From positions 62,001 to 126,000 of IMG/VR virus record IMGVR_UViG_3300049043_000112: DNA of 64,000 nucleotides; one strand, written 5' to 3'. Each line of letters starts with the position of its first letter. Positions within the stretch are counted from its first letter, which is position 1. A model generated the notes under the pieces. That model saw nothing but the letters and a program-made list of their open reading frames with translations. It ran no database searches and was not told where the DNA came from. The position numbers and the translations under genes are program-made. This document shows positions 19,132-53,680 of this stretch, piece after piece.

Positions 19132-19201
19132 GTTTGTGTGGTAACTTGTCAGGTTGGGGAGATTTTATCATCTCCCCTTATAAATAATACACCACACAAA
19201 C
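19132..19201 (+). promoter_or_regulatory. Endonuclease-associated cis element: outer stem, inner hairpin and late promoter (copy A)
   Basis: GTTTGTGTGGT (19132) pairs with ACCACACAAAC (19191); inner GGGGAGAT/ATCTCCCC hairpin; TATAAATA at 19179. Confidence 0.75.
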
Positions 19202-19210
19202 ATAGAGCAG

Positions 19211-19651
19211 ATGAAAGAAATTGCAGGGCATCCTGGTTACTTTGTCACAGAAGATGGCAGAGTGTTTAGTAACAAATCAGGAGAGTTAAAAGAAAGAAAG
19301 CAGTATAAACATAAAAAAGGATATAAGATAATCTGCATCAATACGGAGGGAAAACAATATACTTTGAGGGTGCATAGATTAGTTGCAGAATTGTATATCC
19401 CAAATCCAAACAATTTACCTCAAGTTAATCATAAAGATGAGGTCAAAGATAATAACCACATTAACAACTTAGAGTGGTGTGATAATCAATACAACTGCGA
19501 ATATTCACACGCAAAGACGCATAAAATAAAAACCCCCACAGGTGAAACTGTAGAGGTCTTTAATATCAGAAAGTTTTGTAGAGAGAATAACCTTCACTCT
19601 GGTGCTCTATACACTAGAGGAAAGAATAAAGGTTATTCTCTCATTAATTAG
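19211..19651 (+). mobile_element. Free-standing NUMOD4-HNH homing endonuclease
   Basis: GYFVTEDGRVFS, VHRLVAELYIPNPNNLPQVNHKDEVKDNNHINNLEW. It is an AT-rich gene inserted antisense into the GC-rich island. Confidence 0.9.
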
Positions 19652-19887
19652 AAGGCGACTAACTGATCAATGGTCCACTGATCAACCTCCTGAACGTCGC
19701 CACCGCAGTTCTTCCGCAGCCAGGCGTTGATGTGCTTCGTGGTGGTGCTGCTCCACTTGTGGGCGGTGCGGATCCAACCCTTACCAGGCACCAGGGCGGC
19801 AACGGGGGTCACGTAGGAGAACAGGATGCAGGTCCCGTCTGCCAGTTGCACCTCAGTCTGGTTGCTGCCGATCTGTTGGACGATCAT
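19648..19887 (-). CDS. Conserved phage hypothetical protein (early cassette)
   Basis: LFSYVTPVAA..WSSTTTKHINAWL; own promoter and palindrome at 19910/19946. Confidence 0.7.
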   Translation of the reverse strand: MIVQQIGSNQTEVQLADGTCILFSYVTPVAALVPGKGWIRTAHKWSSTTTKHINAWLRKNCGGDVQEVDQWTIDQLVAF

Positions 19888-20395
19888 GGGGTTCCTTTGA
19901 ACTGATGTAAGTATAAGGGGTCAGACGGTCAGGGAGGCGGGGGGTTGTGCCACTGGTTTAAGTGTCACCACCACCATGGGGTTCTGGGGTTGACTTTCAT
20001 CCCCATGGCAGCACACAGTATGGGGAACCCGATGGCAACGACCATCAGCAGGGCGGCGGCAAGGTAGTGATTCATCGGGCGATCAGGTCGGCGGTAGTGT
20101 GCAGCACGTCAGCTGTCACACTGCGGACGGGACGGATCGGTTCCCATAGTAGCCAGAGCAGCGTGGCAGCGATCAGGATGCGGAGCATGGGTCAGGCGGC
20201 AAGGTGAGCAGGGGAACCACAGGAGCGGTAGAAGTCTACCATGCGCTCCGCCTCTTCAAGGGTGGGGAACCACTGGGAGCGCCACTCACACTGGTTGTAG
20301 GGGACCTGGTAACGGACTTCGTAGCGAATCAGTGCCATGGGGTTGGTTGCTGATGAAATCAGTATAAGGGGTCAGGGTGCCAGGTCTACGGGGTG

Positions 20396-20419
20396 TGTGC
20401 CACCTGTTCAACTGGCACA
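20396..20419 (-). promoter_or_regulatory. Early palindromic element (perfect copy)
   Basis: TGTGCCA-CCTGTTCAAC-TGGCACA, 30 nt from TATACT (20361-20366). Confidence 0.8.
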
Positions 20420-20448
20420 CGGGCAGCCGACCTGAGTATACCTAACTC

Positions 20449-21345
20449 CTACGCTGCCACGTTGAAGCGCCCAGCGTTGAAGTTATGATAAGCGAAGACC
20501 TCACGATTCACCAGTTTGAACATACCAAACTCATTAGAGAGAACATAACCTTCGGCATCAATTCGGTTGCCGTTGATGTATGCTGCAGGACCATTGTTGC
20601 GGCACAGGAACAGGCAGTCATCTTTGATCGACTTCACCAACGCCCACAGACGCAGCAGGTTAGCATCACAATCAAAGTCCTCTGCTACGATCTCATCACC
20701 AGCACGAATGTAGGCATTGATCTGTTGTTTGATTCGTGCTGCCTCTTTATCACTCACAAAGGTTGCAGTGGTTGCCATTTGACGGGCGAACATGCACACC
20801 TCTTCAACATCAGCGAACGACGTTTGACCGTGCTGGATGTATGCTTCAGGTTGCACGAACAGAACGTGCTCAGTGCTCTGCAGATTCACCATCAGAGGCT
20901 CTGCCCAACTGTCACGAAGATCGTCGTTTGCTTCATACACAGTGTGCGGAGCGATGATAATGTTCTGGGTCACAATGTCTCCGAACAGATAGGTAATCGT
21001 GTTGGGAGTGTACTCATTCAGACCACCAAACCCGATAAAGTCACCCTGAATGATAGACTCAGTACGGGGCAGATGGTCAAGGCACGAGTGCAGAATTTGG
21101 GCAACTTCACCCTGATAGAACGCATCAACCTCCTCATGATTGTGGGCAATACGAATCTTTTTCTTGTTAAAGACTGCTTTGGTTCCTACAAAGAACTCAC
21201 CGCAGGCAGGATCAATACCCCACACGATTGCAGGACTTCCATCAATTTTTACACTTAACTTACCAGGATTGACAAACCAATCCAAAACCGACAAATCTCC
21301 CGTAAGGATGGTATCTTCAGGATGTTCGAGGTGTGTGTTTTGCAT
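20449..21345 (-). CDS. Conserved T4-like phage protein (NTHLEHPED family), function unknown
   Basis: MQNTHLEHPED, SVKIDGSPAIVWG, FFVGTKAVFNK, IIQGDFIG, AEGYVL..KLVNREVF; early promoter and palindrome at 21367/21403. Confidence 0.75.
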   Translation of the reverse strand: MQNTHLEHPEDTILTGDLSVLDWFVNPGKLSVKIDGSPAIVWGIDPACGEFFVGTKAVFNKKKIRIAHNHEEVDAFYQGEVAQILHSCLDHLPRTESIIQGDFIGFGGLNEYTPNTITYLFGDIVTQNIIIAPHTVYEANDDLRDSWAEPLMVNLQSTEHVLFVQPEAYIQHGQTSFADVEEVCMFARQMATTATFVSDKEAARIKQQINAYIRAGDEIVAEDFDCDANLLRLWALVKSIKDDCLFLCRNNGPAAYINGNRIDAEGYVLSNEFGMFKLVNREVFAYHNFNAGRFNVAA

Positions 21346-21461
21346 TGCTTGTTTGTTGATGCCTTTAGTATTGCACGGATTCAGGAGGACCACAAGGGGT
21401 CTTGTGCCAGTTCTCAAAGTGGCATATAATATAAATAAAATAGACGGACCCCAGCAACTTT

Positions 21462-21932
21462 ATGAATCTAATACAACGAAACGCAATACAATTTGAAACA
21501 CCAAAGTTTCAAATTGAAATGAACGAATGGATTAGAATTGCCAGTGATCAAATAAGAAAAAGACACAGTAGGACTAGAGTAGGAAAGGTCAAACATTCTA
21601 GGTGTGATGCTAAACCAGTCCTGAAAGAAGAAGATTATTGTTATTACACTGGCATTAGATTTGCAGATGTGGAACAACAATTTGTCAATCCAAATGACCC
21701 ACGAAAAAGATCATTAGATCATAAAATTCCTCTAGCAATTTGTTACATCAACGGAATGACAATGGATGAAGCGAATCATCCAGACAATCTATGTTGGTGC
21801 CTAAAAGTTATAAACAATATCAGGGGCACTTCAGACCTTGAATCATTCAAACCTGTTGCAGAATACTATAGAAAAAAGTTCATAGAAGCAGGATACGATT
21901 ATACATCCTCTTCAAGTTGCTCTGCAGGGTAG
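21462..21932 (+). mobile_element. HNH-type endonuclease
   Basis: SLDHKIPL..NHPDNLCWCLKVINN motif; TATAAATA late promoter at 21430-21437; antisense to its neighbours. Confidence 0.65.
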
Positions 21933-23296: not shown

Positions 23297-23498
23297 GGGG
23301 TCTTGTGCCAGTTACGAAACTGTCCACCAAACCCCCCACAAGGTCCCTTGCCGTGATATCTTAATATTAATCGAATGAGGGGAAGGGTATCCCTGCAGAC
23401 GAAAATACATCGCCACTCCCCCTGCCATAAAATATTCATTCGCAATAAGAAACCCTTATTGCGAATAAGAGTCTTGTGCCAATATTTAAACTGTCACA

Positions 23499-23651
23499 CT
23501 AATCGAACGGGTCGAATTCTTTTACCCTACAATGAATATCTTCCCCTGGTTCGAGTTGCAATAACTCTCTCCAGTCCACGTGATCTAGATTTAGGTCATC
23601 ATAACACATAATGTCTAGTGTAACCTGTATGATGCGCTTCTGTGCTAACAT
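23499..23651 (-). CDS. Hypothetical 50-aa protein
   Basis: Manual translation MLAQKRIIQVTLDIMCYDDLNLDHVDWRELLQLEPGEDIHCRVKEFDPFD. Confidence 0.5.
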   Translation of the reverse strand: MLAQKRIIQVTLDIMCYDDLNLDHVDWRELLQLEPGEDIHCRVKEFDPFD

Positions 23652-23683
23652 GGTGTCTAGATGTGTATGTGTACTAGATTATA

Positions 23684-29610: not shown

Positions 29611-29635
29611 TGCGGTTCCCTTGATTACCTTGTAA

Positions 29636-31625: not shown

Positions 31626-31627
31626 AC

Positions 31628-32623
31628 TTAGGATACCTCATTAAAAGGCGATGGAATTTTTTTGAACAGATCTTTAGTAGGATGAAAAGAAGTCATATTC
31701 ATCTTAACAAGTTCCTTAACCTTATCAGACATAAGGTAATCTCTAAGAATGACTGCATCCTCGATTGTATCCGTTTTTAGGAACACAACACTGAAAGTAA
31801 CAGATGCTTCATAAGGTTTGATCATAATTTTACCCAGTCCACCCCACTCTGCTGCCATATTCATAATGACACCGTGCTGATTGCGACCAGTTTCTTCTAA
31901 ACCAGGTTCAATATACCTAATTTTTGGAGTCTCTTCTGTCCCAAGAATTTCAACAATCGGAACACCACCAGGATGATCTTTGATTGCATTCCGATACAGA
32001 TTTCCGTTAAAATACCTGTGTGCCATATTGTTAGAAACTTGATCAATAAAGTTAGGATTGTCCAACTTGATCAAGTCTTTCTCTGTCAGATTTTTTTCAA
32101 TAACTGTACCGTCCTTATAAGTAACCTTGCAAGGTCCTTTGTGATTTTTATCCCAGGTTACAACACAAGTTTGAGTATTCTGAACAGTCGGAAACGTTTC
32201 TGGCGGAAGGTATTGAATAGAAACCAAATTCCCAGAACTGAACAGTTTTTTTCTAAAATTAGAGGAAGATTTCATAAAGTGTTTTGCCCTAATAATTAGA
32301 GAAACTCTGTCAGCAATTTCTGTGCTTTTCGTAAAGAAATCAGAATCCAAATTATTAGAACAACCACCCGTATTAGCACCACTAACTTTAGAGCGATCGG
32401 AATATGGAGGGTTACCGATTACAACATTAAACCTCATACCTTTATCCGCAAGTTCTAAAAATTCCTGAAAATCTACAACTACATTTATTTTATCATTTAT
32501 CTGATTGATTGTATAGATGTGCCTAGGATCATTCTCCCAAACCCAAATATTCTCTGGTGAATATTTTTTAAGGGCAACCATCGAATGAGTACCCTTAGGG
32601 TCTCCAATAATCAGGAGGTTCAT
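31628..32623 (-). CDS. Eco57I-like N6-adenine methyltransferase catalytic/target-recognition subunit
   Basis: FNVVIGNPPY (motif IV), ETFPTVQ..TCVVTW; only a degenerate motif I (LLIIGDPKG). Confidence 0.8.
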   Translation of the reverse strand: MNLLIIGDPKGTHSMVALKKYSPENIWVWENDPRHIYTINQINDKINVVVDFQEFLELADKGMRFNVVIGNPPYSDRSKVSGANTGGCSNNLDSDFFTKSTEIADRVSLIIRAKHFMKSSSNFRKKLFSSGNLVSIQYLPPETFPTVQNTQTCVVTWDKNHKGPCKVTYKDGTVIEKNLTEKDLIKLDNPNFIDQVSNNMAHRYFNGNLYRNAIKDHPGGVPIVEILGTEETPKIRYIEPGLEETGRNQHGVIMNMAAEWGGLGKIMIKPYEASVTFSVVFLKTDTIEDAVILRDYLMSDKVKELVKMNMTSFHPTKDLFKKIPSPFNEVS

Positions 32624-35942: not shown

Positions 35943-35955
35943 TCAGTTAGAGTCC

Positions 35956-40793: not shown

Positions 40794-41267
40794 TTATTCT
40801 CCAAGAGTATGAATGACTGGTTTTTCGTGTGCAAGAATGTGATAAAGGTCTGGATTCTTTGCTGCTGATACTGGAACAAATTCTGTCTCAGGATTAAACT
40901 CTTCATCACGAATTGCCTGATTAATGACAATAGAACCATCAGCACCAGAATATGAACGATGGAAGGTCATCTTAGGGATCACCAGAGCACCAGAAGAACG
41001 GTTAAGATGTACGATATGATATGGATAACGCCACTCTGGATTCACCAGTTCAAATGTGCGAAGACCTTGTAAAACGCGATTATGATCGATCTGATGATAA
41101 TGAATATAAAATTGTTTTGCACCAACAATATCGTCAGGTGGACTGATTGCAGGTCCAGTATGACATACAAGGTCTTGTGCATTAGATCCATCTACCGAAA
41201 TATCATAAAAGACAACTGCTTCGGTCTCACGAAATACTCTATGTTTCTTAAACTGAACTTCTGACAT
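40794..41267 (-). CDS. Cupin-like conserved cyanophage/cyanobacterial protein
   Basis: FYIHYHQIDHNRVLQG.RTFELV..ALVIP..TFHRS cupin-type His pattern. Confidence 0.55.
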   Translation of the reverse strand: MSEVQFKKHRVFRETEAVVFYDISVDGSNAQDLVCHTGPAISPPDDIVGAKQFYIHYHQIDHNRVLQGLRTFELVNPEWRYPYHIVHLNRSSGALVIPKMTFHRSYSGADGSIVINQAIRDEEFNPETEFVPVSAAKNPDLYHILAHEKPVIHTLGE

Positions 41268-43209
41268 TTTAATCGTAAGTGTTTTGCTCCTGGTTCAGTC
41301 TATCTATATGATGATAAATGGTCGCCTGTGAGTATTTAAATTCTTCAAATCGTTGCGGTTTATTCTTCTGCATTTTTGTGAGCATATTGATCCACTGATA
41401 ACGACTGTCTACCACCCAACCATAACGACGCTCATCGTGCATCATATCATAAATTGAAATCATTTGAACCCCCTACTTTTCTTTTTGTCTAATACTTCAA
41501 TGTGACTTAGAAAATTTCCACCACGCTGAAACCATGTGACCTGAACATCTTCATAGTTGTCAAAAACCATTTGGTTACCATCTTCAAAGATTAACTTATA
41601 ATCGTGAAGAATATAAGGTTCATCTGATGTTTGTTTGAATACTTTAAGTTCGGTCATTTTTCATAATAATAAGTTTACCAGCAAGCATTCCATAAAACAT
41701 CTCACACACCTTATCCTCACAAGATTTCATTTTCTCTTTGGAGAGAACAATAAGTGCGTTCAGTTCTTCTTCGTTAAGATTCCAATCAGTTAGGTTGTGC
41801 TCGGTTACTTTCATTTCATCCATAACATAAAGATTTTGGTTTTTCAGTATCAAATGTTGACCACTTTGCTATTTTAAGGCACATCAGCAAAGTTTGGTGT
41901 TCGCGGTTATACAGTTCCCAATCTTGTTTAAGTTTCGCAGCATACCTACGACGATAAGCACAACACCAGACATTGTAGTAGATTTTGTCCTTTTCACTCA
42001 GGGACATATCTGCTCTCCATATACCCAACCAGTATCAGTCTTGATAAGTTCCCAATAAGAATCTTCACCAAGTCTTCTAAAAAGATAACGTGTCCCATCT
42101 TCACGCTCACAAAGATAATCACACTTGTGAGGAGAATACAAGCGAACTTCAAGTACTTTGTCGTTTTTGTTGAGCATAGGTAATCACATATTTTTTATGT
42201 TCAGTATAAAGGTCGGAACAAGTATAGTGTTCCAACTTACCACCAAGTTCTTCTGCAATTTTTTGCAATTGTTTTTCAAGTTCAGTCATTTGGAGCAATG
42301 TAAAAAGTAAAAGTAACGTGCTGCATTTGTAGGTCCATATTGTACCACATCACAACCCTTATAAGTATCAACAACCACAAACTTTCTTTCTATTGGAGTT
42401 GGTTGCATTTCTAACCAGTTAGCAGCAAAGTTGATACCAAATGCTAGTAATGCGAAACCAGCAAAAATTAGAATAGCATTTTTCATTCTTCATCATCCCA
42501 AGGTGCTTTGCGGTTCATAAGTCTTTTAACACTCTCCATCGTTTCTTCACTTGGTAATTCTAGCATCTCTACAAGAGCATCAAAGTCTTTTGCTGGTAAG
42601 GTAATCTTTTCTGGTGGATAAGAACCTTTACCCCAATACTTCTCAAACTCATATTTGTATTCCATATCCAAATACCCACCATTCAGAGAAGACCAGAAAA
42701 TCCCCAGACACCATAATCATCAAAACGGAAACCTTCGTGAGAAATCAAACGATACCACCACCAGAAACTTGAATAACGGAGAAACCTGCTGCCTATGATA
42801 AGTTTATGGAAGTTCATTTCTTCGTCCAACAATAAACTTCCATTTGCATCCAACCATCATTTAGTTCTGCCCACATTGCGTGAGGAAGTTTATAAGAATA
42901 CTTCTTATCTCTCATCCAATGAGACCACGCTTCCCAAGCATACCCTACACTCTGCCATCCCCAGATGAAGTTTCTCCACTTCTTAAGGTCATATACCCAG
43001 TCGTTATCAGTATCAAAAATATTAAATTTAAAATGAGGTTTGAAATCGTATTCAAAAAAATGTTTGTTATACTGTTTGCGAGTGTAGTTATCGTATCGTT
43101 GGCGGAGATTGATGAGAGTGTTGAGCATAACAATTTGACTTCATAAAGTTATTATACAGCAAAGGGCACCTGATTTCAAGTGCCCCCTGTTCCAGTTCTT
43201 CAAGTGTCC

Positions 43210-43988
43210 TTATGATATTCTTACTCTTTTGGAAGTATCTATTTCTCTTGCTCGTTGATATTGAGTAAGATTTCCAGCATTAGTTATAAATCCAGTTTCA
43301 AGACACATCCATTTTTGTGAGGCAACTTTTTTACCAGTTTCACTCATTTGCTTACTCGTCAACGAAAATATTCCTTTTTCTCTTCATAATTTTTCTTGAC
43401 TATTTGCCGTTTTTCTTCAGTAGTTAAAGAAAATATTCCCTTACCTTCATCACGAAGTTTTTTTCCTTTTTCACTATGGTTCTCAAAAGTTTGTGCGTGA
43501 ATTCCTTTTCGTTCTTTATAAAGTTTTTGCCCGTTTCTTTTTCCCAATTCACTTCTTTCTTCAAAAGTTTGTGAGTGAATTCCTTTTTTATCTCTATAAA
43601 GTTTTTGTCCTCTTTTTCTTCTTTCTTCTGTGGTTTCTGCGTGAATTCCCTTACATTCTTTATATTGATTTTGTCCAGTTTTTCTATTAATATTTAATGA
43701 AATAAAACCACCACAATTTTCATTCAAGCACCACTTATCTGTATTGTAAAATGGTTTGATTAATCTTTTTTCAACTTCTTGTGCTTCAATATATCCTTCA
43801 TCAGTAAAATCAAAAAACTGGAGTATTTGTTTCTTTGGAGTATAAAGTTCCCAACACCATTTATGAGTTATAGGAGAACCCATATAATACTCATTATATG
43901 TTTTTTCTTTATGAACACCATAATAGTAATACAAAACTTCCTCAAAGGTAATTTTGTATAAGTATATTCTTGGACTTTGTGAAGTCAT
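43210..43988 (-). mobile_element. GIY-YIG-type free-standing endonuclease with tandem helical repeats (frameshift in an A-run near 43378)
   Basis: IYLYKITFEE..YYYGVHK..YMGS, CLNENCGG. The restored C-terminus QKWMCLETGFITNAG..IDTSKRVRIS matches the 47777 paralog. Confidence 0.75.
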
Positions 43989-43995
43989 TTCTATT

Positions 43996-44080
43996 CTACA
44001 AGAACCGCATTACTATTTATAATAGAAAAGGTGCCCGAAAGCACCTAATCTTTTGTCTGTAGAGATTGCGGTTCCTATAG
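43996..44080 (-). promoter_or_regulatory. Endonuclease-associated cis element (copy B)
   Basis: Arms at 44067-44080 and 43996-44009 (GAACCGCA/TGCGGTTC core); inner AGGTGCT-TTCG-GGCACCT hairpin with T-tract; TATAAATA at 44014-44021. Confidence 0.75.
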
Positions 44081-47000
44081 ACATTAATATTTAGTAACGA
44101 TGCTCTGGAACAATCGTAGGTTCTTCTACATCTGGACCTTTCATATTTCCAGTATTACAAGAATAAAGAGTTGAAAGTTTTTTACCTTTACGGACGATGT
44201 TAAAGTGGTCTATTTGTCCATTAGAATGAGTGAAGGAAAACCAAACAGCATCATCTCCCATTACCTCATAATGAACACTCACATTATCCAGGAAGAGTTC
44301 ATCAACATTTTGTAGTTCGTTCATAAGTCCCTGATTTTCCCATAGTTCAAATAGTCCCAAAACCTATCGTTATAATCCTCAAAGTCCCATTCAGGATCAG
44401 TTCCATCATAAGTCATCAAGTCACTCCAATTTTGATATACCCATCTCCACATCAATCTTCGCAACCAGAACTGTTTGATCTTATATGTGAGGTTCATTTT
44501 GGTTCCTCATCTTTATTAAAGACTTTATAAGAAGAAGTAGTAGTCATCACAGCAATCAAAAGAAACCAACCCCAACCAGCAATCCCGTGAAGAGCAAGAA
44601 AAGTTGCTCCAACCACACAGGCAATAGAAGTTAGTTCAGAACAAAATAAAAGAAGTGCGTGTTTCATTTGATAGTCAAAGTTTGATTTTTGATTTGACAA
44701 AGACGGGAAAGATTATCACCAGCAGCAGCAACTTGAAAGAAGTTGTAGTTAGTCCCACACTCTTGATTAAGTGCTTGTTGAGTTGTGATGACTTTTGTAA
44801 CTGCTATGATAGGAGCAGAAATAAACATAAGAATAACACTACCAACAATCAAAACAGTAAAAGCATCCTCAGGATTAAAGTTTTTGAGTTTCATCAGGTT
44901 TCTGTGTGTATGAAGTCATTATAAAGCATCCAGAGACACCCAGAGCATCCCCTGTGCCAGTTCTTCAAGTGTCTTATGCTACACCATCAGCACTATCTTT
45001 CCATTCAGTATCTTCTTTATCTCTCAAACTATCCAATACTTGAAGAAGAAAGGCAATAGAGTCAGCATACTCTCGTCCATCTTGCCCACCCATTACCATA
45101 TAAGCAATCTCTTTCTCAGCAAGTTCAATTCTCTCATTTCTTGTAAGTTCTTCTAGTGTAGGACGATACCATTCACCATTTTCCTTCTTTTTGTAACCAG
45201 CAGCAAGTTTTCTGGTTTCTTCCTCTTGTTCCCATCGTTTTACATAAGCAAGTTGTCCGAATTCTTCTTCCTCAATTTCAGCAAGTTTCGTCATCGCATT
45301 ACCATTCTCTTCATAGAGTTTATCAAGAGCATCAAGAGCCTTCCGTTCTGCTTCTCTTTTTTCTGCTAATTCAAACATTTCATCGGGATATGGTTCAGTC
45401 ATTTTGATTTCAAGTTTAGTTTCAGGTGCTTTGGTTCCAATAGTAAGGTCTTCAAGAGTAAATTGACCAGTCATACGGGAAGTTTCTTTACCATTAGTCT
45501 TGAAGATTAAGTCCTTATCCATAAGTTCTCTCAATTTCTGTTTGCCGTATTCTGTGAGTTCTTTTTTAGATTTGCGGAGATCTTCTACTTCCTTATCAGA
45601 AAGATGGAACCCATCAGGAATGTTCCCGTATTCTTCGGTCATTTGAATGTATCCTGAAACTTCTTCCATCCTTCATCTAATTGTTTTTCTGCCCATCCCC
45701 AAACACCGTGCTCCATACCATCAATTTTAGCACATTCAATCTCATCTTGAATGAGTCTGCGGAGCATTTCAATTTGTTCTTCAGTCATCTCTCTCCATTT
45801 CGTTTTCATAATCACGATAATCCCACTTGAGGTGGTGTTGTATCAGTTTGAGAGCACTTGGAACATCCAGAGCATCTCCATCACAAGTCCATTCACCAAC
45901 TTTGATATCATAATACACCAGACAATCTGGGGTGTATTGATGTATGTTGATGTCTATGTGGTTAGTCATTTTTTGAATGTCTCCTTGAAGGTTTCCCAAG
46001 TATAAGATTTCAGTCGTTCCACATCATTTTCAAGTTCTTCAATTCTAAAATAAAGTGCCTTCAAATGTGATGCGAGTTTATAAATGTTTACCTTATCAAT
46101 CTCATAACATCCACTATCATCTGTGAGATTCGGTGAAGATATTTCTCCAATCGTCGGTGTGTTCAGTCATTTGAATGTTTCCTTGAAGGTTTCCCAAGCA
46201 AGGGTATTGAAGTTATTATGCTCATAAGCAAACTTCTCTCCTCGTTCTTCCCTCAACATATAATCAACCTCACACTGAATAAGTGCCCGAAGTTGGTCAA
46301 TCTGTTCGTCAGTCATCGCAGTTTCTCCCGCATAAGTTTCAGACACTCATTCCATTTGTAAGAGTTAGTATCGTGAGATGGAGGTATCCATTCGGCAACA
46401 ATATCTACAAGTCTATCAGTCATCTCATCACAGTCAATACCATATCCAACTTTCTTTCCAACTTCTTCCCAAATCAAGTCATAAAGTGTCTGTGGTTTTG
46501 ATTCTTCCACTCTCTTATACTTCACACCCATAATGGTTGCATATTCTCCTTCTATGAGAACCTTTGAGATGTCGGTTTCAGTCATACTTTCCTTTCTTTA
46601 CATCATTAAACCAAAGTCCTTCAAGAAGACGACGAGTTTCAGTATCAGTAATAGCAATCATCATCACCACACCCTCATCAGTAAATTTTCTCTTATACCA
46701 ATTATGACTTCCATCATTAAATTCATGACGACTATAATTCTCATCATTATAAAGGACAATCTCAAACTTACCACCAAGTTCAAAGTTCATTCTTGGTTGA
46801 GATTTATGTGTCTCAATCTCTTTGAGAAGTTCCAGTTTCTTTTGAAGCACTTTGATTTCTGCTTCTGTCTTTTCAATATCAGAATTAAAAGTCATTTGTT
46901 TCAGGTAAGGAGTAGCATCCATCACACCATCTTTCATTGCTTGTCTAAAAGCATTACGCAGACCTTCGTCTACTTGTTCTGGTGTTTGTGGAGTTGGTTG

Positions 47001-47776
47001 AAATTCAGTCATCGGTTCTGGTAAAAATCCTTCACGGATAATTCGTGGTTTTGGAAACTCTGGTTTATTCATCATATCTCCGCATCAATATTCATAAAAT
47101 TGATCAATTACTTTATAATCTTTATCTCGTACCGTACCAGCATAAGGATAGATAGAACTTACAGTTTCTTCCATATCAGGAACAACTTCATAACGGTAAA
47201 TGTCATCGGCATTTCCACCACAATCAACAGAGATTACATTTCCGTCAGGTAAAGTACCACTATAAGTAAAAATATACTTATAATAACTTGAAAATTTCAC
47301 CTTTACTTCACCGTATTTTTCAATAAACTCTTCTTTTGTCATTTGGAGTTGGCAGTGTTGTTTGTGTATGAGAGCATTATACGACAAAAGGCACTCGGTT
47401 TCAAGTGCCCGTGTTCCAGTTTGCGAAGTGTCCTTTTCTATTTCATCATAATACTCTGGTTCATCAGGTGGTTCAGGGTACCCATCTTTTAATTGTACTG
47501 CTTCATAACCCTTCTGGAAGGCATCCCAACTCACAGCATCCCAATCTCCCATAGCAATACTTGTTTCTGGATAATGTCCATAAACATCTTTATATGCTTC
47601 TTCTACTGGAGATTTCATCTTCTCCATTTCTTCCAAGAGTGCAAGTTGCTTTTCCAGCACTTTGATTTCTCCTTCTACTTGTTCAATTAGGTTCATCAGT
47701 CTTAGAGCATCTCCCAGTATTATAACCTGTAAGGCACCCGAAATCAAGTGCCCGTATTCCAGTTTATAAAGTGTCC

Positions 47777-48502
47777 TTATGATACTCTCACTCTTTTAGA
47801 AGTATCAATACCTTTTGCTTTTTGATATTTTGATAAACCACCAGAATTAGTGATATAACCAGTTTCAAGGCACATCCATTTTTGTGCGTTATTTTTTCTG
47901 GATAATTCACTTCTTTGTTCTGGTGTTAGTGAAAAAATACCAGTTCCATTTTTCATTTGGGTTCTTGCCCCCATTCTACCATATTCACTTCTTACTTCTT
48001 TTGGTAATTTTCCAAGTCCGCTTGCATATGCTTTTTTGGCAGAGGCAGATAATTCTTCACTCGTTAGTGTGAATATGCCGAGTTTATTATCTCTTGTATA
48101 AGCACCATTTCTTTTTCCAAGTTCAACTCTTTCTTCTGTTGTAAGTTGAAACATTCCTAATTTATTTTTATGTTGATTTTTTCCTTTTCTACTTGCCTCT
48201 TCAAAAGATGGTATATAACAAAACTTTGTAGAAGTTTGTTTGGATTTATTAGCAAAGTGTGGATTTTCAACTACTTTATAATACTCTTGTAAAATAATCT
48301 TATCAGCATATGCTTCCTCTCTTGTAGCATAATCACTTTTCAAAATTATCTTCTGTGTTGGATTGAATGTCCTATCGTGAAAAGAACCAAAATACTTTAC
48401 ATCTTCTTCTGGTAAGCATTTACAAGTTCTACTACCAATATATCCTCTACCATATTCCTCATAGGAATAATAGGTGTAATGATACTCTTTTTGAGTTTCC
48501 AT
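47777..48502 (-). mobile_element. GIY-YIG-type free-standing endonuclease with tandem helical repeats
   Basis: YHYTYYSYEEYGRGYIGSR..YFGS, NPHFANK; GIFxLTxEExxE repeats; C-terminus shared with the 43210 gene. Confidence 0.8.
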
Positions 48503-48514
48503 AGTTCTATTCTA

Positions 48515-48600
48515 TTAAGACGGCACTACTATTTATAATAGTTTATAATAGAAAAGGTGCCCGAAAGCACCTAATCTGTCCGTAGAGATTGCCGTCTTAA
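48515..48600 (-). promoter_or_regulatory. Endonuclease-associated cis element (copy C)
   Basis: Perfect 11-bp arms TTAAGACGGCA/TGCCGTCTTAA; same UUCG hairpin as copy B; TATAAATA at 48530-48537. Confidence 0.8.
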
Positions 48601-51600
48601 CAGACATTCTTATTTATTATCGTTCTCTACATCTTCTTCCAGTTGTTTATAAAGAGCATATTCATATCCGCACAAAAATGCACTTTCAACCCAAGAAATA
48701 AGAATTTGTTTCCTTTGGTTCTCATCTTCAATTCTTATGTCGTCTTCAAAGTATTCATACCGAAATGTAAATCTACCATAAAAATCTCCATAAAACCACT
48801 TATTAAATGAAAGTTGAGCATCTTCTTGAGGGTCAAGATATTCATTTGTTGGATGTTTAGTCATTCTTCCAAACTCTTAATACATTTTTGAATAAGGGCA
48901 TTCCACCTCTTTGGAGTAAGTTTCTCACTCGCATAAGAACTCCTAAAAGGATACTTATACCAAGTCAAACGGAAGTTCTCACTTGGGATTTCAAAGTTAG
49001 GTTTATCCATCTCATCTTCTTCATCACCCCAATAATAAGGACGGATGATAAAGAAGTCGTTGGAGAAATGTGGAGTATATCCATAATCTTTTTCTCCTGT
49101 TTTTTCTGTAATCGCATCAATCAGGATTTGAAATGGGCCACCCATCCATTTCTCACGAGGAACACTATATTCTTCTGTGGGATTGCCGAATAAGATTTGT
49201 CCTAGTTCAAGTTCGTTAGTCATTTCAGGTTCAGTAGTTCTTTTTCTTCATCAGTTAAGGAAGCAAGGTCTTTTTTGAGTTGTTTAAGTTTCCGTTCTTT
49301 TGCTTTTGCTTTGACTGCTTTTTCTTTTTCCAGTTGTTTTAGTCGTTTCGCATACTCTTTATCGTTTTCTTCCCGATGCTTATAAAGGTAATATTCAGTG
49401 TATTTTTCACCACCATAATCCCACTCATATTCACTTTCAATCCCTTCCCAACCAGCATCTAACTCTGCTTGTAGTGAGGTAATAATACTTTCAAGAGTTC
49501 CTTCAAGAATCCCATAATATTTTTGAGTTTCTTTGACTTGAATTCGTTTGATAGTCATTTCATTCACCTTTCAATTGACGAATTTCACTTTCAAGTTCAT
49601 AAATGCGTTCATTCATTTGGTGAAGAAGCATAATCAACGAACGACCACAGATGGTTTCACCACTATCTTCTGAAATAGCAGAAATAATATCTTCTGCTTC
49701 AGAGTTGTTGTAGGGGAAGTATTCCTTTGCGTGTGCTTCGGGATATTGAGTATCCCAAGACCTTTCAGGAATAGTTTTTTCAAAGAGAGTAGTCATTTCA
49801 GTTCTCCATAAGAAAGATGTTGGATTTCTTCTTTGGTCAAGGTTTTCATATAACCACGAGGATACTCATTATCATAAGCATTGAAGACAAAAACTGGAAT
49901 GTTTCTTTCCTTACAGATTTGTTTGAACTTTTCTTCATTCAGTTCAAACTTATGAACATAAACAACGATTGGATAATCATCCCAAAATCCAACAAGACTT
50001 TCTGGATAATAATCCCACTCAAACTCATCAAGTTCTTGAATGATTTTTTCTACATCTTGAATATGTTCTGGATTAGTGTAAATGCGTCCGTATCCTTTGT
50101 AATTGAAGGCAGTCATTTCAAATCTGGTGTTGTTTAAGGTGAAGTTTGATACAATCCATAACATCATTAAGAGTTAGACATTCTCCTTCATAAGTAAAGT
50201 CTCCATTTTCCAGATGTAGAATTTCAAGAGTGTAATAAAACATTCCTTGAGGATGATATTGTTTGATGTCAATGTGGGTTTCGTAGTCCATCAGTTCTTA
50301 TAGAGTTTGTAGATTGCGTCTGCGAGTGCGAGTGCTTCTTCTTTATCCATACAAATGTAATTAACCCTTTTATCACCTTTCTCTTTATTATAATCAAACT
50401 CCCAATAAGAAACAGTGAAACCATCGCATCCTACATCAAGATGAGTGTCTTCGGCAGTGTACCAGAAATCTTGATGTTGTTGAATACGAACTTGATTGGT
50501 GATTTTAAGAGTCATTGGTTTGGTTGCGTATAAAAGTATTATATCAAATGGAATAAGAAGAACTCACTTCCGTCCAAGGAAGAGTTTCCAGTTCCTCATC
50601 GGTAAATTGAATACCATCATCATAACTTGCTTCATTTTTGTAGAGATAAAACTGCTTAAAATTAACAACAGTCCCTCTCAAATCTCCTTCTTCATCTACT
50701 TCATAGACAAGCACATCACAATACTTATTCCTATCATAAGTCAAGATTGTTGCCTTACGAATAGGTGCTGGTTTTCCAGCAACATCACCATAACATTCAA
50801 TAGGATAATCAGTAAAAGCATCAAGCATTTGGAGTTCCTTTGTGTATGAGTGTATTATAAGGCATCCAGAGGCACCTGTGAAGTGTCCTTGTGCCAGTTC
50901 TTCAAGTGTCAGTCAAGGTTTTCAATCTCTTCACATAGTTCCAATAAATCATAACACATAATCACACCAGGAGACACTTGAAGAACATTAATCACCTCAC
51001 GGAGAGTAGCAGCAAGATGTAGGTTAGGGTCGTGCTGTGGGTCATAATAATAATGAGAAAATACTTTTCTTGCTTTTTCTTTCATAGTAGTCATAGTGCT
51101 CCCTCCTCAATCATTTTACGCATCGTTGCTTCACTAATAATGTCTTGTTCCAGTTCGTGTGGTGGTGCTACTTTGAGGTAGATTTCATAATGAAACTCAT
51201 TCATATCTTTGGAAGGGATATATCCTTTGTAAGAAATCATTTTTTGAATTGCTTTGCGGGCAGGGTCTTCCCAGTCCTCTTTGAAGTTGAACATTACAGA
51301 ACCTCACATAATGGAAAAACTCTTACACTTGAAATAAATCCTGGTTTTGTGTATTTTTCTTTGTAATCTGCTGCGAACTCTTTTGCTTGAAGTTTAGTTT
51401 CAAAAGTCCCAAAGTATCGGTGAAATGCTTCTACACCTTCATATTTGTTATAAAGTCCCACTATCCACTTATGAGAATGTTCTGGGTAGGTGTCGTTTTC
51501 TTCTATCCAAGAGTAGTATGCGTCCTTATTCATCACCAACTCCCATACTTGTCTTCAATTTCTTTCACCCGTTCCATAAAACTATCCTCTCCGTGATCGC

Positions 51601-52952
51601 CAGCATACAACCTATCAATATGATACATCACATCAGACAACTTGTGAAGATAGTGGACTTGTTCTTCCAGATACTCTATGGTTTCTGGACTATAGTTCTT
51701 CACATAACCATACTCATCCTCTTTGTTATTGTTGAGGATTTCTTCTTCCAAGTCCCTAGCAAATTGGGAAACTTGGAAGTAGCAGTAATCACCAAAGTGT
51801 CCGCCGCTCATTCTTCCTCCTCCTCATAAGGGAACATAGCATCATACTCTTCATCAGTCAGAGTAAGATACTCCACATCAGCATCTTGATGATCTTCGGC
51901 ATATATTACCTGATAACGCTGGAATTCGTTCCAGTCATTAGCAGCATATTCTATGATGCCGTTCAGAAGACAAAGGTAGTTCATCACAATACCTCCCAAT
52001 CACATTCCCAATGACAATCGTTGCTTACATTTACCCAGAAGAAGTATTTCTGGTTCTCTGATGCGAGAAACATCATACCATCACCCTTGTCCTGTTCCAC
52101 AATACAAATAGGATTGTTGTCCATCGTATTACACAGACGGTTCTTGGCTTTGCTGCTTTTGGGTCTTACGGTTACTCTTCTCATTTTGAATCTCCAATTT
52201 CAGTTTGCGGATACCAGTAATAAAATAAGCGAAGTCACGGGTTTCTGTGATAGGTTTGATTTCACCACAGACACCACACTTTGACTCATAAACAGAGGAG
52301 CATCCTACGGAATACACTCCATACTTTTTCCCGCAGTCAAAGCAGGTATTGGCAGCATTCTCAAGTTTCTTGAGTAGTGCTTTCTTCTCTTTGAGGTTCA
52401 TAGTAGAGTTCAACTCCATACTTGTTTTTGAGGTTGTCTGTGAGGTAATCATACAGCAGGTCGGCAAACCCGTAATGGGGTCTTGTGCCACTTTCTATAC
52501 TGGAACTGGTCGCCACTGTCCACATTATATCCAGTGCTTTCTTATCAGGTAGGTTCTTCATCTTCTAATGCCTCATCTAAATCCACACCTTCCAATACTT
52601 CATTTGCCCACTTCAACTTATCCATTACTTCATCCATAGGATATGTCTCTACTTTACCAAGCTCAACATCTTCTACCATTTGCATCAGGTGCTCTAAAAA
52701 GTGTTTGGGATAAATGTCATCTTCCAAACTATCCCAGAAATAAAGAGCACACTGTTCTAATGGGTCATCACTTATAAGAAGAGCATATTCTTGATAGTTG
52801 TCTCCCATCAAGTCACCCCAGTTCTTGAAAGCATACCAACAATTATACCACCCTTGAATGATACAAGAGTGCCAAATATATTCAAACCAAGTTAATTTGG
52901 TTTTTTTCTTATCAGTTCCTAAAAGAGGTCGTGAAAACATATGAAACATTCT

Positions 52953-53591
52953 TTACTTTAACATCATAGCATTTTTGTTGAAAAATATCCATCCTTTGTG
53001 TTGTTTTTGTTTTTTATTTAATACTTTAATAAATGCTGATTGGTCTAGATTATATTTTCTACATATTTCACGCATAGTATCATATTCTTCTATTACTTTT
53101 CCAGATGGAGAAACTAGAATATAACTTTTTTTAAAGTTATTTTTAAATTTTTCAATAGTTTCCTTTGATACAATTTTTCCTTTATTTAATCTACTTAATT
53201 TTTCTCTCGTCTCCAGAGTAATTATTCTATTCTTACTTTTTTCTGCTATTTTTTGTTTTGTTTCTAATGTATGCCTCTTACCATAAAAATTATTTTTTTC
53301 TCCAGAGGCAATACGACCACTTACTCCATCACCACCATCAGTTTTGTTATAGAGAATACCTGTTTCTAAATCTTTTCTACCAAACACGGCAATCATATAG
53401 ATTTCGTGCTTAAATGCTTCTTCTTCTGTTAAATTCTTTTTGAGAAATATTATTCTATCTAGATTTTTTGGTTTCCCAACTTCACCTTTACCCTTATTAT
53501 ATAATCTTCGTCCTTCTCCTTTACCTATGTAATAGGGTGTTCCATCCTCACGCAAATACGCATAAGTATAAAATCTAGGTGAATTTGCCAT
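52953..53591 (-). mobile_element. GIY-YIG homing endonuclease with NUMOD3
   Basis: FYTYAYLREDGTPYYIGKG, LYNKTDGGDG, NNFYGKRHTLETKQKIAEK. Confidence 0.88.
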
Positions 53592-53600
53592 AGTTCTACT

Positions 53601-53680
53601 CTTAAACTAACCGCATTAGTATTTATAATACAAAGGAGGAGATTTTTCTCCTCCAACCTTACAGATTGCGGTCAGTTAAG
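53601..53680 (-). promoter_or_regulatory. Endonuclease-associated cis element (copy D)
   Basis: CTTAACTGACCGCA pairs with TGCGGTTAGTTTAAG; inner GGAGGAGA/TCTCCTCC hairpin; TATAAATA at 53620-53627. Confidence 0.75.

What the first reader, a model, noticed from the sequence alone, without database searches (positions are those of the whole stretch)
19132..53680. Shared nested RNA/DNA cis element upstream of four endonucleases from two unrelated families
Seen: four free-standing nuclease genes (HNH 19211+, GIY-YIG-type 43988-, 48502-, 53591-) are each preceded by a 70-90 nt element with the same layout. The layout is 5' arm, linker, GC hairpin (with a T-tract in copies B-D), TATAAATA, 3' arm complementary to the 5' arm, then TAGA and ATG. 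The arm sequences differ between copies (GTTTGTGTGGT, GAACCGCA, TTAAGACGGCA, CTTAACTGACCGCA) yet pairing is kept, which is covariation-like. Linkers are conserved across families: GCAATCT in B, C and D; GT(C/A)AGGTTGG(G/A)G(G)AGA in A (HNH) and D (GIY-YIG). Known: T4 endonucleases such as I-TevI use late promoters plus RBS-occluding hairpins. Inference: this is a portable double lock. Early read-through is terminated, or folds over the translation-start region, while the late transcript starts between the arms and is translatable. The element appears to travel with different nuclease cargos. A structured or guide ncRNA role is a weaker alternative.
Basis: partly seen in the sequence, partly recalled or inferred. 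Interest (0 to 1): 0.8.

Follow-up and report, generated by a model that had tools for sequence, protein, structure and literature searches.

The report
Structured late-promoter leader of cyanophage nucleases
Four mobile nuclease genes in this T4-like cyanophage each start with the same ~100-base control cassette, which most likely keeps the nuclease untranslated until late infection; this kind of control is already known from phage T4, but this version is more elaborate and very widespread.

Summary
Four copies lie at 19115-19213 (+), 43986-44093 (-), 48500-48616 (-) and 53589-53693 (-), each ending at the ATG of a nuclease gene.

The family is large. About 190 copies were found in viral contigs, and isolates S-SRM01, S-B68 and B23 also carry it. 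None was found in 596 Gb of cellular genomes, and no Rfam family covers it.

- **Structure:** covariation is very strong. The inner long-range stem is 99% paired, with 9 of 9 pairs covarying across 72 distinct sequences.
  - The stem is 15-19 bp and covers the Shine-Dalgarno (SD)-like TAGAG box.
  - A small covarying hairpin, P1, encloses the 5' arm.
  - An invariant second late-promoter-like box, (A/C)TAAATA, sits at the 5' edge.
- **Mobility:** filled versus empty sites show the cassette is the left end of the inserted nuclease gene.
- **Cargo:** 12 clusters of downstream ORFs; most of those tested by profile are HNH, GIY-YIG, EndoVII-like or NUMOD3 proteins.

The most likely function is a terminator plus translational lock on long transcripts, opened by late transcripts that start at the internal promoter. 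This matches T4 I-TevI and segB, Aeh1 mobE, and hairpins reported in 2009 in metagenomic cyanophage loci. I rate it a new variant of a known kind.

No transcript data could be obtained. A roughly 55-62 nt antisense-like small RNA made from the upstream box is not excluded.

The parts
19115..19213 (+). Copy A, whole element (upstream box to ATG)
   Evidence: Covariance-model R1 hit at 58.9 bits, E=1e-6.
19115..19120 (+). A: upstream box, TAAATA preceded by C (CTAAATA)
   Evidence: The box is invariant in the family.
19127..19154 (+). A: P1 hairpin. GCCTGG pairs with TCAGGT, and the 5' arm TTTGTGTGGT (19133-19142) lies in the loop.
19156..19177 (+). A: P2 GC hairpin (GGGGAGAT/ATCTCCCC), followed by only TT, so no T-tract
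19179..19186 (+). A: internal late-promoter box TATAAATA
19191..19210 (+). A: 3' strand of the long-range stem (ACCACACAAA plus CATAGAGCAG, which includes the SD-like TAGAG); it reaches -1 of the ATG
19211..19651 (+). A cargo: HNH endonuclease, 146 aa
   Evidence: Pfam HNH_3 and NUMOD4, both just below Pfam's own cut-offs; phrog_59 'HNH endonuclease' at 2e-36.
43986..44093 (-). Copy B, whole element
   Evidence: R1 hit at 107.1 bits.
44088..44093 (-). B: upstream box (CTAAATA). Its TAA is the stop codon of upstream ORF 44091-44360.
44055..44082 (-). B: P1 hairpin (GTCTAT/ACAGAC) with the 5' arm AGGAACCGCA and the linker ATCTCT in the loop
44029..44046 (-). B: P2 hairpin with a UUCG loop, followed by TTTTCTATT; terminator-like
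44014..44021 (-). B: internal late-promoter box TATAAATA
43995..44009 (-). B: 3' strand of the long-range stem (TGCGGTTCTT plus GTAGA)
43359..43988 (-). B cargo: SegE-like GIY-YIG candidate, 209 aa. It is frameshifted; the conserved C-terminus continues in another frame at 43213-43380.
48500..48616 (-). Copy C, whole element
   Evidence: R1 hit at 92.6 bits.
48611..48616 (-). C: upstream box (AATAAATA)
48578..48605 (-). C: P1 hairpin (GTCTGT/ACGGAC) with the 5' arm TAAGACGGCA in the loop
48555..48572 (-). C: P2 terminator-like hairpin plus T-tract
48530..48537 (-). C: internal box TATAAATA, preceded by a degenerate tandem duplicate (TATTATAAAC)
48511..48525 (-). C: 3' strand of the long-range stem (TGCCGTCTTA plus ATAGA)
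47777..48502 (-). C cargo: nuclease-like ORF, 241 aa; GIY-YIG-like by motif and by ESM Atlas
   Evidence: The relative L322 has 8 NUMOD3 repeats.
53589..53693 (-). Copy D, whole element
   Evidence: R1 hit at 90.6 bits.
53688..53693 (-). D: upstream box (AATAAATA). Its TAA is the stop codon of ORF 53691-53909.
53656..53682 (-). D: P1 hairpin (GCCTTA/TAAGGT) with the 5' arm ACTGACCGCA in the loop
53635..53654 (-). D: P2 hairpin (GGAGGAGA/TCTCCTCC) plus TTTGTATT; terminator-like
53620..53627 (-). D: internal box TATAAATA
53599..53615 (-). D: 3' strand of the long-range stem (TGCGGTTAGTT plus TAAGAG; one G-U pair and one bulge)
52953..53591 (-). D cargo: GIY-YIG-type homing endonuclease with NUMOD3 and an I-HmuI-like NUMOD domain, 212 aa

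Best explanation
The element is the 5' regulatory cassette of mobile, free-standing homing-endonuclease genes in a lineage of T4-like cyanophages (Kyanoviridae). It insulates the nuclease gene from incoming transcription and gates its translation.

**Proposed mechanism (inferred)**
1. Transcription entering from upstream meets the P2 hairpin and its T-tract, and mostly terminates there.
2. Any RNA that carries the 5' half and reads through folds a 15-19 bp long-range stem. In this stem an anti-SD-like strand (X) plus a copy-specific arm pair with the complementary arm and the SD-like TAGAG/TAGAA box, which lies 7-10 nt before the AUG. Initiation is blocked.
3. RNA started at the internal late promoter lacks the 5' half. 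The predicted +1 is the first base of the 3' arm. Its 18-25 nt leader is therefore open, and the nuclease is translated late.

P1 is a local hairpin of X with an SD-like decoy and holds the 5' arm in its loop. It is the form the 5' half takes before, or without, the 3' arm.

**Shown here:** the anatomy, the conservation, the covariation of all three helices, membership in the inserted DNA, and linkage to nuclease cargo.

**Inferred only:** promoter activity, termination and translational repression.
For: **Structure**
- Inner long-range helix: 99.2% of cells paired, 9 of 9 pairs with changes on both sides. Outer helix: 87%. P2: 94.8%. These come from 72 distinct sequences, and 0 of 500 shuffles reached the observed values.
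- A plain MAFFT alignment gives the same picture.
- Cognate 5'-half/leader duplexes are -18 to -24 kcal/mol. Non-cognate pairs within one genome are -4 to -14.

**Promoter and leader geometry**
- The internal box lies 24-28 nt before the ATG, like the ATAAATA boxes before other genes of this window and before S-SRM01 late genes.
- The lineage's SD-like motif is TAGAGG. The outer 3' strand of the stem is that motif.
- P2 in B, C and D passes the terminator scan.
- Predicted unpaired probability of -13..+3 rises from 0.37 in the read-through RNA to 0.59 in RNA started at the internal box, over 71 elements.

**Mobility and cargo**
- Filled/empty comparisons place the element at the left end of the insertion.
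- Cargo comprises 158 unique ORFs in 12 clusters. Representatives of most clusters match HNH, GIY-YIG, EndoVII-like or NUMOD3 profiles.
- S-SRM01 has 6 copies, each before a nuclease-like ORF.

**Precedent**
- The same logic is shown experimentally for T4 I-TevI and Aeh1 mobE, and is predicted for I-TevII, I-TevIII and segB (PMC2988022, PMC3014915).
Against: - There are no transcript ends or expression data. The only RNA runs found did not cover the elements.
- In B-D the stem stops 7-9 nt before the AUG, and the predicted accessibility change is modest. In D even the short leader is predicted mostly paired, at 0.16.
- The invariant upstream box matches the lineage's late-promoter consensus. 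It would produce 'locked' or terminated RNAs at the very time the lock should be open, and the simple model gives it no role.
- P1 covaries but is not needed for a plain cis lock.
- Copy A has no T-tract, and the neighbours that match phage families are on the opposite strand.
Confidence: 0.6

Rival explanations
1. Small-RNA model. The upstream (A/C)TAAATA box is a working late promoter. It makes a discrete RNA of about 53-62 nt, consisting of P1 with the copy-specific arm displayed in its loop, then the P2 terminator. This RNA pairs with the leader of its own nuclease mRNA made from the internal promoter, first loop to 5' end and then by strand exchange of X. The result is a ceiling on nuclease translation even late in infection. 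This could act alongside the cis lock.
For: - In a set whose search pattern did not specify the box, 44 of 44 elements have TAAATA 17-18 nt before GCAATCT.
- The base before the box is A in 62%, C in 34% and G in 5% of copies, and never T. This mirrors which variants are linked to gene starts in S-SRM01: ATAAATA 60 of 91, CTAAATA 7 of 21, GTAAATA 2 of 33, TTAAATA 5 of 49.
- The portal and gp53 genes of S-SRM01 use CTAAATA. S-B68 uses CTAAATA as its internal box.
- Both boxes are followed by the same spacer, NTAAT(G/A). The predicted +1 is therefore the first base of P1 and of the 3' arm respectively.
- All 72 putative short RNAs fold as P1 with the arm in the loop, plus P2.
- P1 covaries although it was not in the covariance model.
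- Arms are orthogonal within a genome.
- The box is brought in by the cassette and is absent from empty sites. In several cases it is not the stop codon. It is conserved in A-type copies whose annotated neighbours are antisense.
Against: - No RNA evidence of any kind exists.
- The box's TAA often does serve as the upstream gene's stop codon, which may be another reason for its conservation.
- Copy A's P2 lacks a T-tract, so no discrete short RNA is expected there.
- S-SRM01 copies at 51249 and 55961 share 9 nt of arm, with cross-duplexes of about -13 kcal/mol, so specificity is not strict.
- The pairing is equally explained in cis.
Confidence: 0.25
2. Recombination-module model. The conserved cassette is mainly a DNA-level portable junction, like the PeSL cassettes of RB49/phi1. 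Homology between copies lets nuclease genes be swapped or moved, and regulation is secondary.
For: - Elements with the same arms (TTTGGACGGCA) precede at least four cargo clusters: MNYLK HNH, B-type, C-type and D-type. This implies exchange at the element/ORF junction.
- The core is nearly identical between B and C.
- The cassette marks the insertion boundary.
- PeSL precedent: PMC2839356, PMC4122927.
Against: - Compensatory changes in three helices show selection on pairing of a single strand, not on DNA identity.
- The arms differ among copies within a genome, which works against homologous exchange there.
- Shuffling is better read as a consequence of a shared regulatory module than as its function.
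Confidence: 0.08
3. 3'-end or processing model. P1 plus P2 mainly form a protective 3' end for the upstream gene's mRNA, or the long stem is an RNase III-type processing site that separates the nuclease mRNA from upstream RNA.
For: - The upstream ORF ends at, or within 10 nt of, the box.
- Tandem hairpins at RNA 3' ends are stabilising (general knowledge).
- The stem is 15-19 bp.
Against: - It does not explain why X must also match the SD-like box.
- It does not explain why a late-promoter box always lies between the arms.
- It does not explain why the element occurs only with nuclease genes.
- The stem is short for RNase III (general knowledge).
Confidence: 0.05
4. Chance inverted repeats, or a MITE-like transposon with terminal inverted repeats.
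For: Inverted repeats flank a conserved core.
Against: - The arms differ between copies while pairing is kept; real terminal inverted repeats would be conserved in sequence.
- No transposase is present.
- There are about 190 copies, always directly 5' of a nuclease ORF.
- All controls by shuffling, by sliding and by cellular genomes are negative.
Confidence: 0.01

Closest known systems
Hairpin-regulated homing endonuclease genes of T-even phages: I-TevI, I-TevII, I-TevIII, segB of T4; mobE of Aeromonas phage Aeh1 (Edgell, Gibb & Belfort 2010, PMC2988022; Uzan & Miller 2010, PMC3014915)
   Same: - A late promoter (TATAAATA) lies inside an RNA structure whose 3' strand sequesters the ribosome-binding site.
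- Long early or middle transcripts are untranslatable. Late transcripts start inside the structure and are open.
- The arrangement is used by both GIY-YIG and HNH nuclease genes.
   Different: - Here the structure is a long-range stem that encloses a separate terminator-like hairpin.
- It also has a covarying alternative hairpin (P1) and a second promoter-like box at the 5' edge.
- One sequence family is reused in front of at least 12 cargo clusters, as part of the mobile DNA.
- The AUG itself is not paired in B-D.
- Nothing here has been tested experimentally.
5'-UTR hairpins of free-standing endonuclease genes in 'fractured gene' loci of cyanophage-like metagenomic DNA (Dassa, London, Stoddard & Pietrokovski 2009, PMC2677866)
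   Same: - Hairpins lie upstream of free-standing GIY-YIG and Vsr-like endonuclease genes in 15 of 16 loci.
- Ten include TATAAATA.
[quoted passage not shown]
- The authors interpret them as Aeh1-mobE-like translational control. This is probably the same element family, or a sister of it.
   Different: - Sequence identity could not be checked, because the figure and supplement are not held.
- That paper does not describe the upstream box, P1, the nested terminator, covariation statistics, insertion-boundary mapping, or the breadth (HNH and EndoVII-like cargo, intergenic insertions, cultured isolates).
T4 late genes e, soc and 49 with inhibitory leader structures (PMC3014915)
   Same: Early read-through RNA is locked by a helix, and late promoters inside the helix give open RNA. 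Gene 49 (endonuclease VII) is a parallel to the window's EndoVII-like gene at 21462, which also has a TATAAATA between short complementary arms.
   Different: Those are single-copy host-phage genes, not a portable cassette. The window's EndoVII leader is not a member of this family by the covariance model.
PeSL cassettes (promoter-early stem-loop) of RB49/phi1, PST and nt-1 (Arbiol 2010, PMC2839356; Comeau 2014, PMC4122927)
   Same: Short, repeated, composite promoter/terminator cassettes sit at gene boundaries in plastic genome regions and are associated with modular gene exchange.
   Different: - PeSLs carry sigma-70-type early promoters.
- They are not linked to nuclease genes.
- They have no long-range stem over a ribosome-binding site.
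- A separate PeSL-like module does follow nucleases B and C in this window.
seg43(25) of Aeromonas phage 25 (PMC2988022)
   Same: A very stable hairpin lies immediately upstream of the RBS without pairing the start codon.
   Different: No embedded late promoter is described for it in the review, and it is a single case.

Membership tests
T4-type hairpin-regulated homing-endonuclease leader | Late-promoter box located inside the inhibitory structure, so that late RNA lacks the 5' strand | tested here: met
   (T/C/A)ATAAATA or CTAAATA lies between the arms in all copies. The predicted +1 falls at the first base of the 3' arm. This rests on motif and geometry only; no transcription start was mapped.
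T4-type hairpin-regulated homing-endonuclease leader | 3' strand of the structure sequesters the Shine-Dalgarno sequence and/or the AUG | tested here: inconclusive
   The SD-like TAGAG/TAGAA box is in the outer helix (87% paired). The AUG is unpaired in B-D. The accessibility change is 0.37 to 0.59.
T4-type hairpin-regulated homing-endonuclease leader | The gene lies on longer early or middle transcripts that enter from upstream | tested here: inconclusive
   Same-strand ORFs end at or next to the box in B, C and D. For A, the neighbours that match phage families are on the other strand. No RNA data were obtained.
T4-type hairpin-regulated homing-endonuclease leader | Translation repressed on long RNA and relieved on late RNA | not testable with these tools
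   This needs reporter fusions or toeprinting.
Conserved HEG 5'-UTR hairpin of Dassa et al. 2009 | Hairpin directly upstream of a free-standing endonuclease ORF in cyanophage-like DNA, containing TATAAATA, with two conserved mutually complementary motifs | tested here: met
   description in PMC2677866. Sequence-level identity with their loci was not testable.
Any Rfam family | Match at or above a family's gathering score | tested here: not met
   There are no hits in the whole window. Permissive searches on A and B gave only hairpin noise at 17-21 bits, against cut-offs of 54-100.
Intrinsic (Rho-independent) terminator (P2) | GC-rich stem, short loop, T-tract directly after the stem | tested here: met
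   Met for B, C and D and for most family members. Not met for copy A, where only TT follows the stem.
PeSL cassette | Sigma-70-type early promoter combined with a stem-loop terminator | tested here: not met
   The 5' element carries late-type boxes. The only sigma-70-like site listed inside any of B-D (43995-44023, 10 of 12) lies on the opposite strand. A different module 3' of nucleases B and C does fit PeSL.
MITE / IS-type mobile element | Terminal inverted repeats conserved in sequence between copies, and target-site duplication | tested here: not met
   The arms differ between copies and covary. The element is only the 5' end of a larger insertion.
Cis-encoded antisense-like small RNA (novel reading) | Own promoter, defined 3' end, and seed complementary to the target leader | tested here: inconclusive
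   A promoter-like box, a terminator and a loop-displayed complementary arm are all present. No transcript has been observed.

The most novel reading that the evidence does not exclude
The 5' half of the cassette is a gene of its own. On this reading a late-promoter-driven RNA of about 55-62 nt (P1 with a copy-specific seed in its loop, plus an intrinsic terminator) base-pairs with the leader of the adjacent nuclease mRNA made from the second late promoter. Each mobile nuclease gene would then carry its own cognate antisense-like repressor, with covarying and mutually orthogonal specificities within one phage genome.
Probability: 0.25. Interest if true: 0.75.

Novelty: new variant of a known kind. 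Interest (0 to 1): 0.5.

Why it matters
- **How selfish nuclease genes are packaged:** the cassette brings its own stop codon, terminator, late promoter and translational lock. A nuclease gene can therefore land between phage genes with little harm and be expressed only late.
- **An uncatalogued RNA structure:** the family is abundant, with about 190 copies seen in capped scans. Its covariation is among the clearest one can expect, which makes it a ready candidate for a new Rfam family.
- **Annotation aid:** the element pinpoints true start codons and flags mis-named nuclease genes. In S-SRM01 two nuclease starts appear to be annotated 54-57 nt too far upstream, and one nuclease is labelled 'translation initiation factor 2'.
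- **Modular exchange:** the reuse of one leader in front of many unrelated nucleases documents modular exchange in cyanophage genomes.
- **If the small-RNA reading holds:** it would be a new type of phage-encoded riboregulation, and a set of naturally orthogonal regulator/target pairs.

Tried and rejected
- **RNA evidence.** Two metatranscriptome runs held only relatives' conserved genes, with no coverage of B or C. A second search listed none.
- **Copy E.** The EndoVII-like gene at 21462 has TATAAATA at 21430 with 6-bp arms. It is similar in logic but is not a family member (R1 E>1).
- **Leader peptide from the ATG after the upstream box.** Rejected: the ATG is often ATA or GTG, and the frame and stop are not conserved.
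- **The box as a remnant of the target site.** Rejected: empty sites lack it.
- **Cassette D splitting a gene.** Rejected: the empty site in L047 has two overlapping ORFs, so the insertion is intergenic.
- **A general 3' module.** The promoter/stem-loop after B and C occurs in only 5 of 61 cassettes.
- **Element following the HNH family.** HNH-A homologues in other phages have no element. The ACG-2014f homologue of nuclease D has none.
- **Fold of B and C catalytic domains.**
  - Profile search against PDB gave nothing, and hhalign to the classic GIY-YIG cluster was not significant.
  - AF2 models were too poor (pLDDT about 30 in the N-terminal domain), so no fold search was run.
- **BLAST of elements against isolate phages.** Only S-SRM01 and S-B68 itself were found. 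No model phage with a published transcription-start map turned up.
- **Papers.** The Gibb & Edgell papers on mobE are not held, so they are cited through reviews.

Full report
**What the window is.** It is part of a 236-kb viral contig, IMGVR_UViG_3300049043_000112. The phage is a T4-like cyanomyovirus. It encodes a gp6-type baseplate wedge protein that is 66% identical to that of the freshwater Synechococcus phage S-SRM01. There is no close DNA match among isolate phages.

**The observation.** All four elements exist and end at the ATG of an ORF. The coordinates are:
- A: 19115-19213 (+)
- B: 43986-44093 (-)
- C: 48500-48616 (-)
- D: 53589-53693 (-)

The conserved 'TAGA' is the end of the 3' strand, and in A the stem reaches -1 of the ATG. 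Only six TATAAATA motifs occur in the window, against about 4.9 expected by chance. Four of them sit in these elements. A fifth precedes an EndoVII-like gene.

**Anatomy as I now read it, 5' to 3'**:
1. An invariant box, (A/C)TAAATA.
2. A spacer, NTAAT(G/A).
3. Strand X, 5-6 nt.
4. A copy-specific 5' arm of about 10 nt, usually ending in GCA.
5. A short linker, often ATCT.
6. X'1, which pairs with X to form hairpin P1 with the arm in its loop.
7. GC hairpin P2, followed by a T-tract in most copies.
8. An internal late-promoter box. It is TATAAATA in the window; AATAAATA and CTAAATA occur in relatives.
9. The same spacer, NTAAT(G/A).
10. The 3' arm, then X'2. X'2 is TAGAG or TAGAA, the SD-like motif of this lineage (compare TAGAGG before S-SRM01 late genes).
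11. A further 7-10 nt, then the ATG.

X can pair with either X'1 (forming P1) or X'2 (forming the outer part of the long stem).

**Size of the family and controls.**
- A pattern without arms or upstream box (GCAATCT ... TATTATAAATA ... TAGAA) found 67 viral stretches, of which about 57 are true elements.
- The same pattern in 596 Gb of cellular genomes found 53 matches, none of them a true element. This measures the chance rate and shows the element is restricted to phages.
Of 118 usable matches, 112 have flanking complementary arms of at least 8 bp, and 102 of those also have the upstream box in place.
- A covariance model (R1) finds exactly the four copies in the window. It finds six in the complete S-SRM01 genome, and one each in the marine phage S-B68 and in Synechococcus phage B23.
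- Rfam has nothing.

**Covariation.** On a plain MAFFT alignment of 49 distinct elements, the long stem plus P2 are 88.7% paired. Nineteen of 22 pairs change on both sides, and 0 of 500 shuffles reach this. Sliding the partners drops pairing to 38-55%.

On the model-based alignment of 72 distinct sequences:
- The inner helix is 99.2% paired, 9 of 9 pairs covary, and up to six pair types occur per position.
- The outer helix is 87% paired.
- P2 is 94.8% paired.

P1 was not part of the model, so the alignment is not fitted to it. It is 83% paired, 6 of 6 pairs change on both sides, and 0 of 500 shuffles reach its pairing or score. Slid controls give 25-44%. X therefore covaries with two alternative partners.

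**Mobility.** Comparisons of filled and empty sites among the fetched contigs show flank homology ending exactly at the first T of the upstream box. It resumes after the nuclease ORF. Examples are:
- L018 versus L044
- L054 versus window 37147-37157
- L047 versus window 41267-41273
- L059 versus L061
- L015 versus L022

. Empty sites have no box. The element is therefore the left end of the inserted nuclease cassette. Its TAA often becomes the stop codon of the upstream gene, but in several cases the upstream gene keeps its own stop a few bases earlier.

**Cargo.** The 158 unique downstream ORFs fall into 12 N-terminal clusters:

| Cluster | Unique ORFs | Evidence |
|---|---|---|
| D-type GIY-YIG | 63 | NUMOD3; hhalign 99.6% to the classic cluster |
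| HNH-like 'MNYLK' | 27 | phrog_655 |
| B-type | 19 | No Pfam catalytic hit; SegE-like GIY-YIG by ESM Atlas |
| C-type | 19 | No Pfam catalytic hit in short forms; SegE-like GIY-YIG by ESM Atlas; a long form has 8 NUMOD3 repeats |
| Classic GIY-YIG | 17 | Pfam GIY-YIG just below its cut-off (E 7e-4); phrog_314 at 4e-58 |
| HNH_3 (A-type) | 4 | |
| 'MKHKHH' with an HNH-like motif | 4 | By eye only; no Pfam hit |
| Singles | 5 | EndoVII-like, HNH, GIY-YIG and NUMOD3, one each; the fifth, L285, has no Pfam hit |

Not every nuclease gene has the element. S-SRM01 has at least seven others without it. HNH homologues in unrelated phages also lack it. Elements with identical arms precede four different cargo clusters, so the leader and the ORF have been recombined.

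**Mechanism.** The best-supported reading is the one established for T4 I-TevI and Aeh1 mobE, and predicted for I-TevII, I-TevIII and segB. An RNA structure hides the ribosome-binding site on long transcripts. A late promoter inside the structure gives an open late mRNA (PMC2988022, PMC3014915).

Here there are three layers:
- P2 looks like an intrinsic terminator in B-D.
- The long stem pairs the SD-like box.
- The internal box is 24-28 nt from the ATG, comparable to the ATAAATA boxes found 20-37 nt before S-SRM01 late genes and other genes of this window.

With T4 geometry the box spans about -13 to -6 (general knowledge). The late RNA would then start at the first base of the 3' arm and have an 18-25 nt leader. 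Predicted accessibility of -13..+3 rises from 0.37 to 0.59. All functional steps are inferred.

**What this model leaves unexplained.**
- The upstream box is as invariant as the internal one: 44 of 44 in a set whose search pattern did not include it.
- Its flanking-base preference (A, then C, rarely G, never T) matches which variants sit before genes in S-SRM01.
- It has the same spacer as the internal box, which places a predicted start at the first base of P1.
- All 72 predicted short RNAs fold into P1, with the arm displayed in the loop, plus P2.
- Cognate 5'-half/leader duplexes (-18 to -24 kcal/mol) are well separated from non-cognate ones in the same genome.

This is what a cis-encoded antisense-like small RNA would look like. 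I rate that reading at about 0.25. It may coexist with the cis lock. Copy A argues both ways. It has no T-tract, so no discrete short RNA is expected. Yet it keeps the box, P1 and a perfect stem, although its annotated neighbours are on the other strand.

**Relation to prior work.** Dassa et al. 2009 (PMC2677866) reported RNA hairpins in 15 of 16 5' UTRs of free-standing GIY-YIG and Vsr-like endonuclease genes in cyanophage-like metagenomic loci. Ten carried TATAAATA, and two conserved motifs complemented each other on the stem. The authors interpreted them by analogy to Aeh1 mobE.

The phenomenon is therefore published.

The following are new relative to that description:
- the upstream box
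- the P1 alternative hairpin
- the nested terminator
- quantified covariation
- the insertion-boundary mapping
- the breadth of cargo
- presence in cultured isolates

PeSL cassettes (PMC2839356, PMC4122927) are an analogous portable promoter/terminator module, but with early promoters and no link to nucleases.

**Verdict.** This is a real, abundant, strongly covarying structured leader cassette. It is a new and more elaborate variant of a known kind of control for homing-endonuclease genes. It is not yet catalogued and not yet tested. There is one open question, the role of the upstream box and P1, which simple transcript mapping would settle.

Noticed in passing
window 43151-43196 (-), 47719-47763 (-), 47376-47420 (-): A second conserved module starts right at the stop codon of nucleases B and C, and occurs once more 340 nt downstream of C. 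It reads GGACACTT..AACTGGAACA..GGGCAC-TTGAAA-..GGTGCC..TATAAT. That is a sigma-70-like promoter (TTGAAA, 17 nt, TATAAT) with a stem-loop embedded between the hexamers, which makes it PeSL-like. It could restart transcription of downstream genes. Only 5 of 61 cassettes elsewhere have it.
   Followed up: partly
window 43210-43988 (-): Nuclease B is frameshifted. The ORF from the ATG stops at 43359 (209 aa). The conserved C-terminus (..SQKWMCLETG..DTSKRVRIS) is encoded in another frame at 43213-43380 and matches residues 225-260 of a 261-aa relative (75% identity, E=3e-18). It is a decaying homing-endonuclease gene or an assembly error.
   Followed up: yes
window 16000-21400: This is a GC island of 54-62% G+C over most of its length (46% in the 19-20 kb bin that holds HNH A), against 29-45% in most of the window, with reversed GC skew.
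- It holds small minus-strand genes: phrog_5643 at 19648-19887, phrog_17176 at 17145-17348, and phrog_18430 (annotated 'toxin', a moron) at 16888-17154.
- It also holds a DUF6267/phrog_455 ORF (20449-21417, -) that matches only positions 14-339 of a 764-position profile.
- Cassette A sits in the island on the opposite strand. In contigs L174 and L182 an A-type cassette sits at the site equivalent to window 20419-20495.
   Followed up: partly
window 21380-21932 (+): An EndoVII-like gene (phrog_1035) has TATAAATA at 21430, flanked by GGGGTC/GACCCC and a TGCCA/TGGCA hairpin. The logic recalls T4 gene 49, but the covariance model does not detect it as a family member.
   Followed up: partly
window 48529-48547 (-): Copy C carries a 10-nt tandem duplication of the promoter region (TATTATAAAC TATTATAAATA). 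This gives a degenerate second box. L061:774-891 has a similar duplication.
   Followed up: no
L187-L191 (S-SRM01, MW015081): The element suggests annotation corrections in S-SRM01.
- The nuclease ORFs probably start at 51348 (annotated 51291) and 192520 (annotated 192466).
- QPX48079 ('translation initiation factor 2', 62515-63273) is a D-type GIY-YIG nuclease. The same label appears on homologues in phages B3, B23 and Sf-CH5.
   Followed up: partly
L021:9620-10700 versus L044:6217-6264: One cassette carries, at the end of its nuclease ORF, a copy of the last about 18 nt of the host gene it was inserted into (..NVSWD stop). The host gene upstream ends with a re-coded version (..NISWD stop). 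This looks like a duplicated and re-coded target site of the kind expected for homing with immunity.
   Followed up: no
L015, L022, L027, L028, L059 and others: Elements with identical arms (TTTGGACGGCA / TGCCGTCCAAA) precede four different nuclease clusters in different contigs. This is evidence that leader and cargo are exchanged as modules at the ATG.
   Followed up: partly
window 31628-34740 (-) and 2582-10945 (-): The phage carries an Eco57I-type methylase-like ORF (331 aa). Next to it is a 706-aa ORF that combines a T5orf172 (GIY-YIG-related) domain with a ResIII helicase domain. There is also a 2787-aa ORF with a YHYH domain.
   Followed up: no
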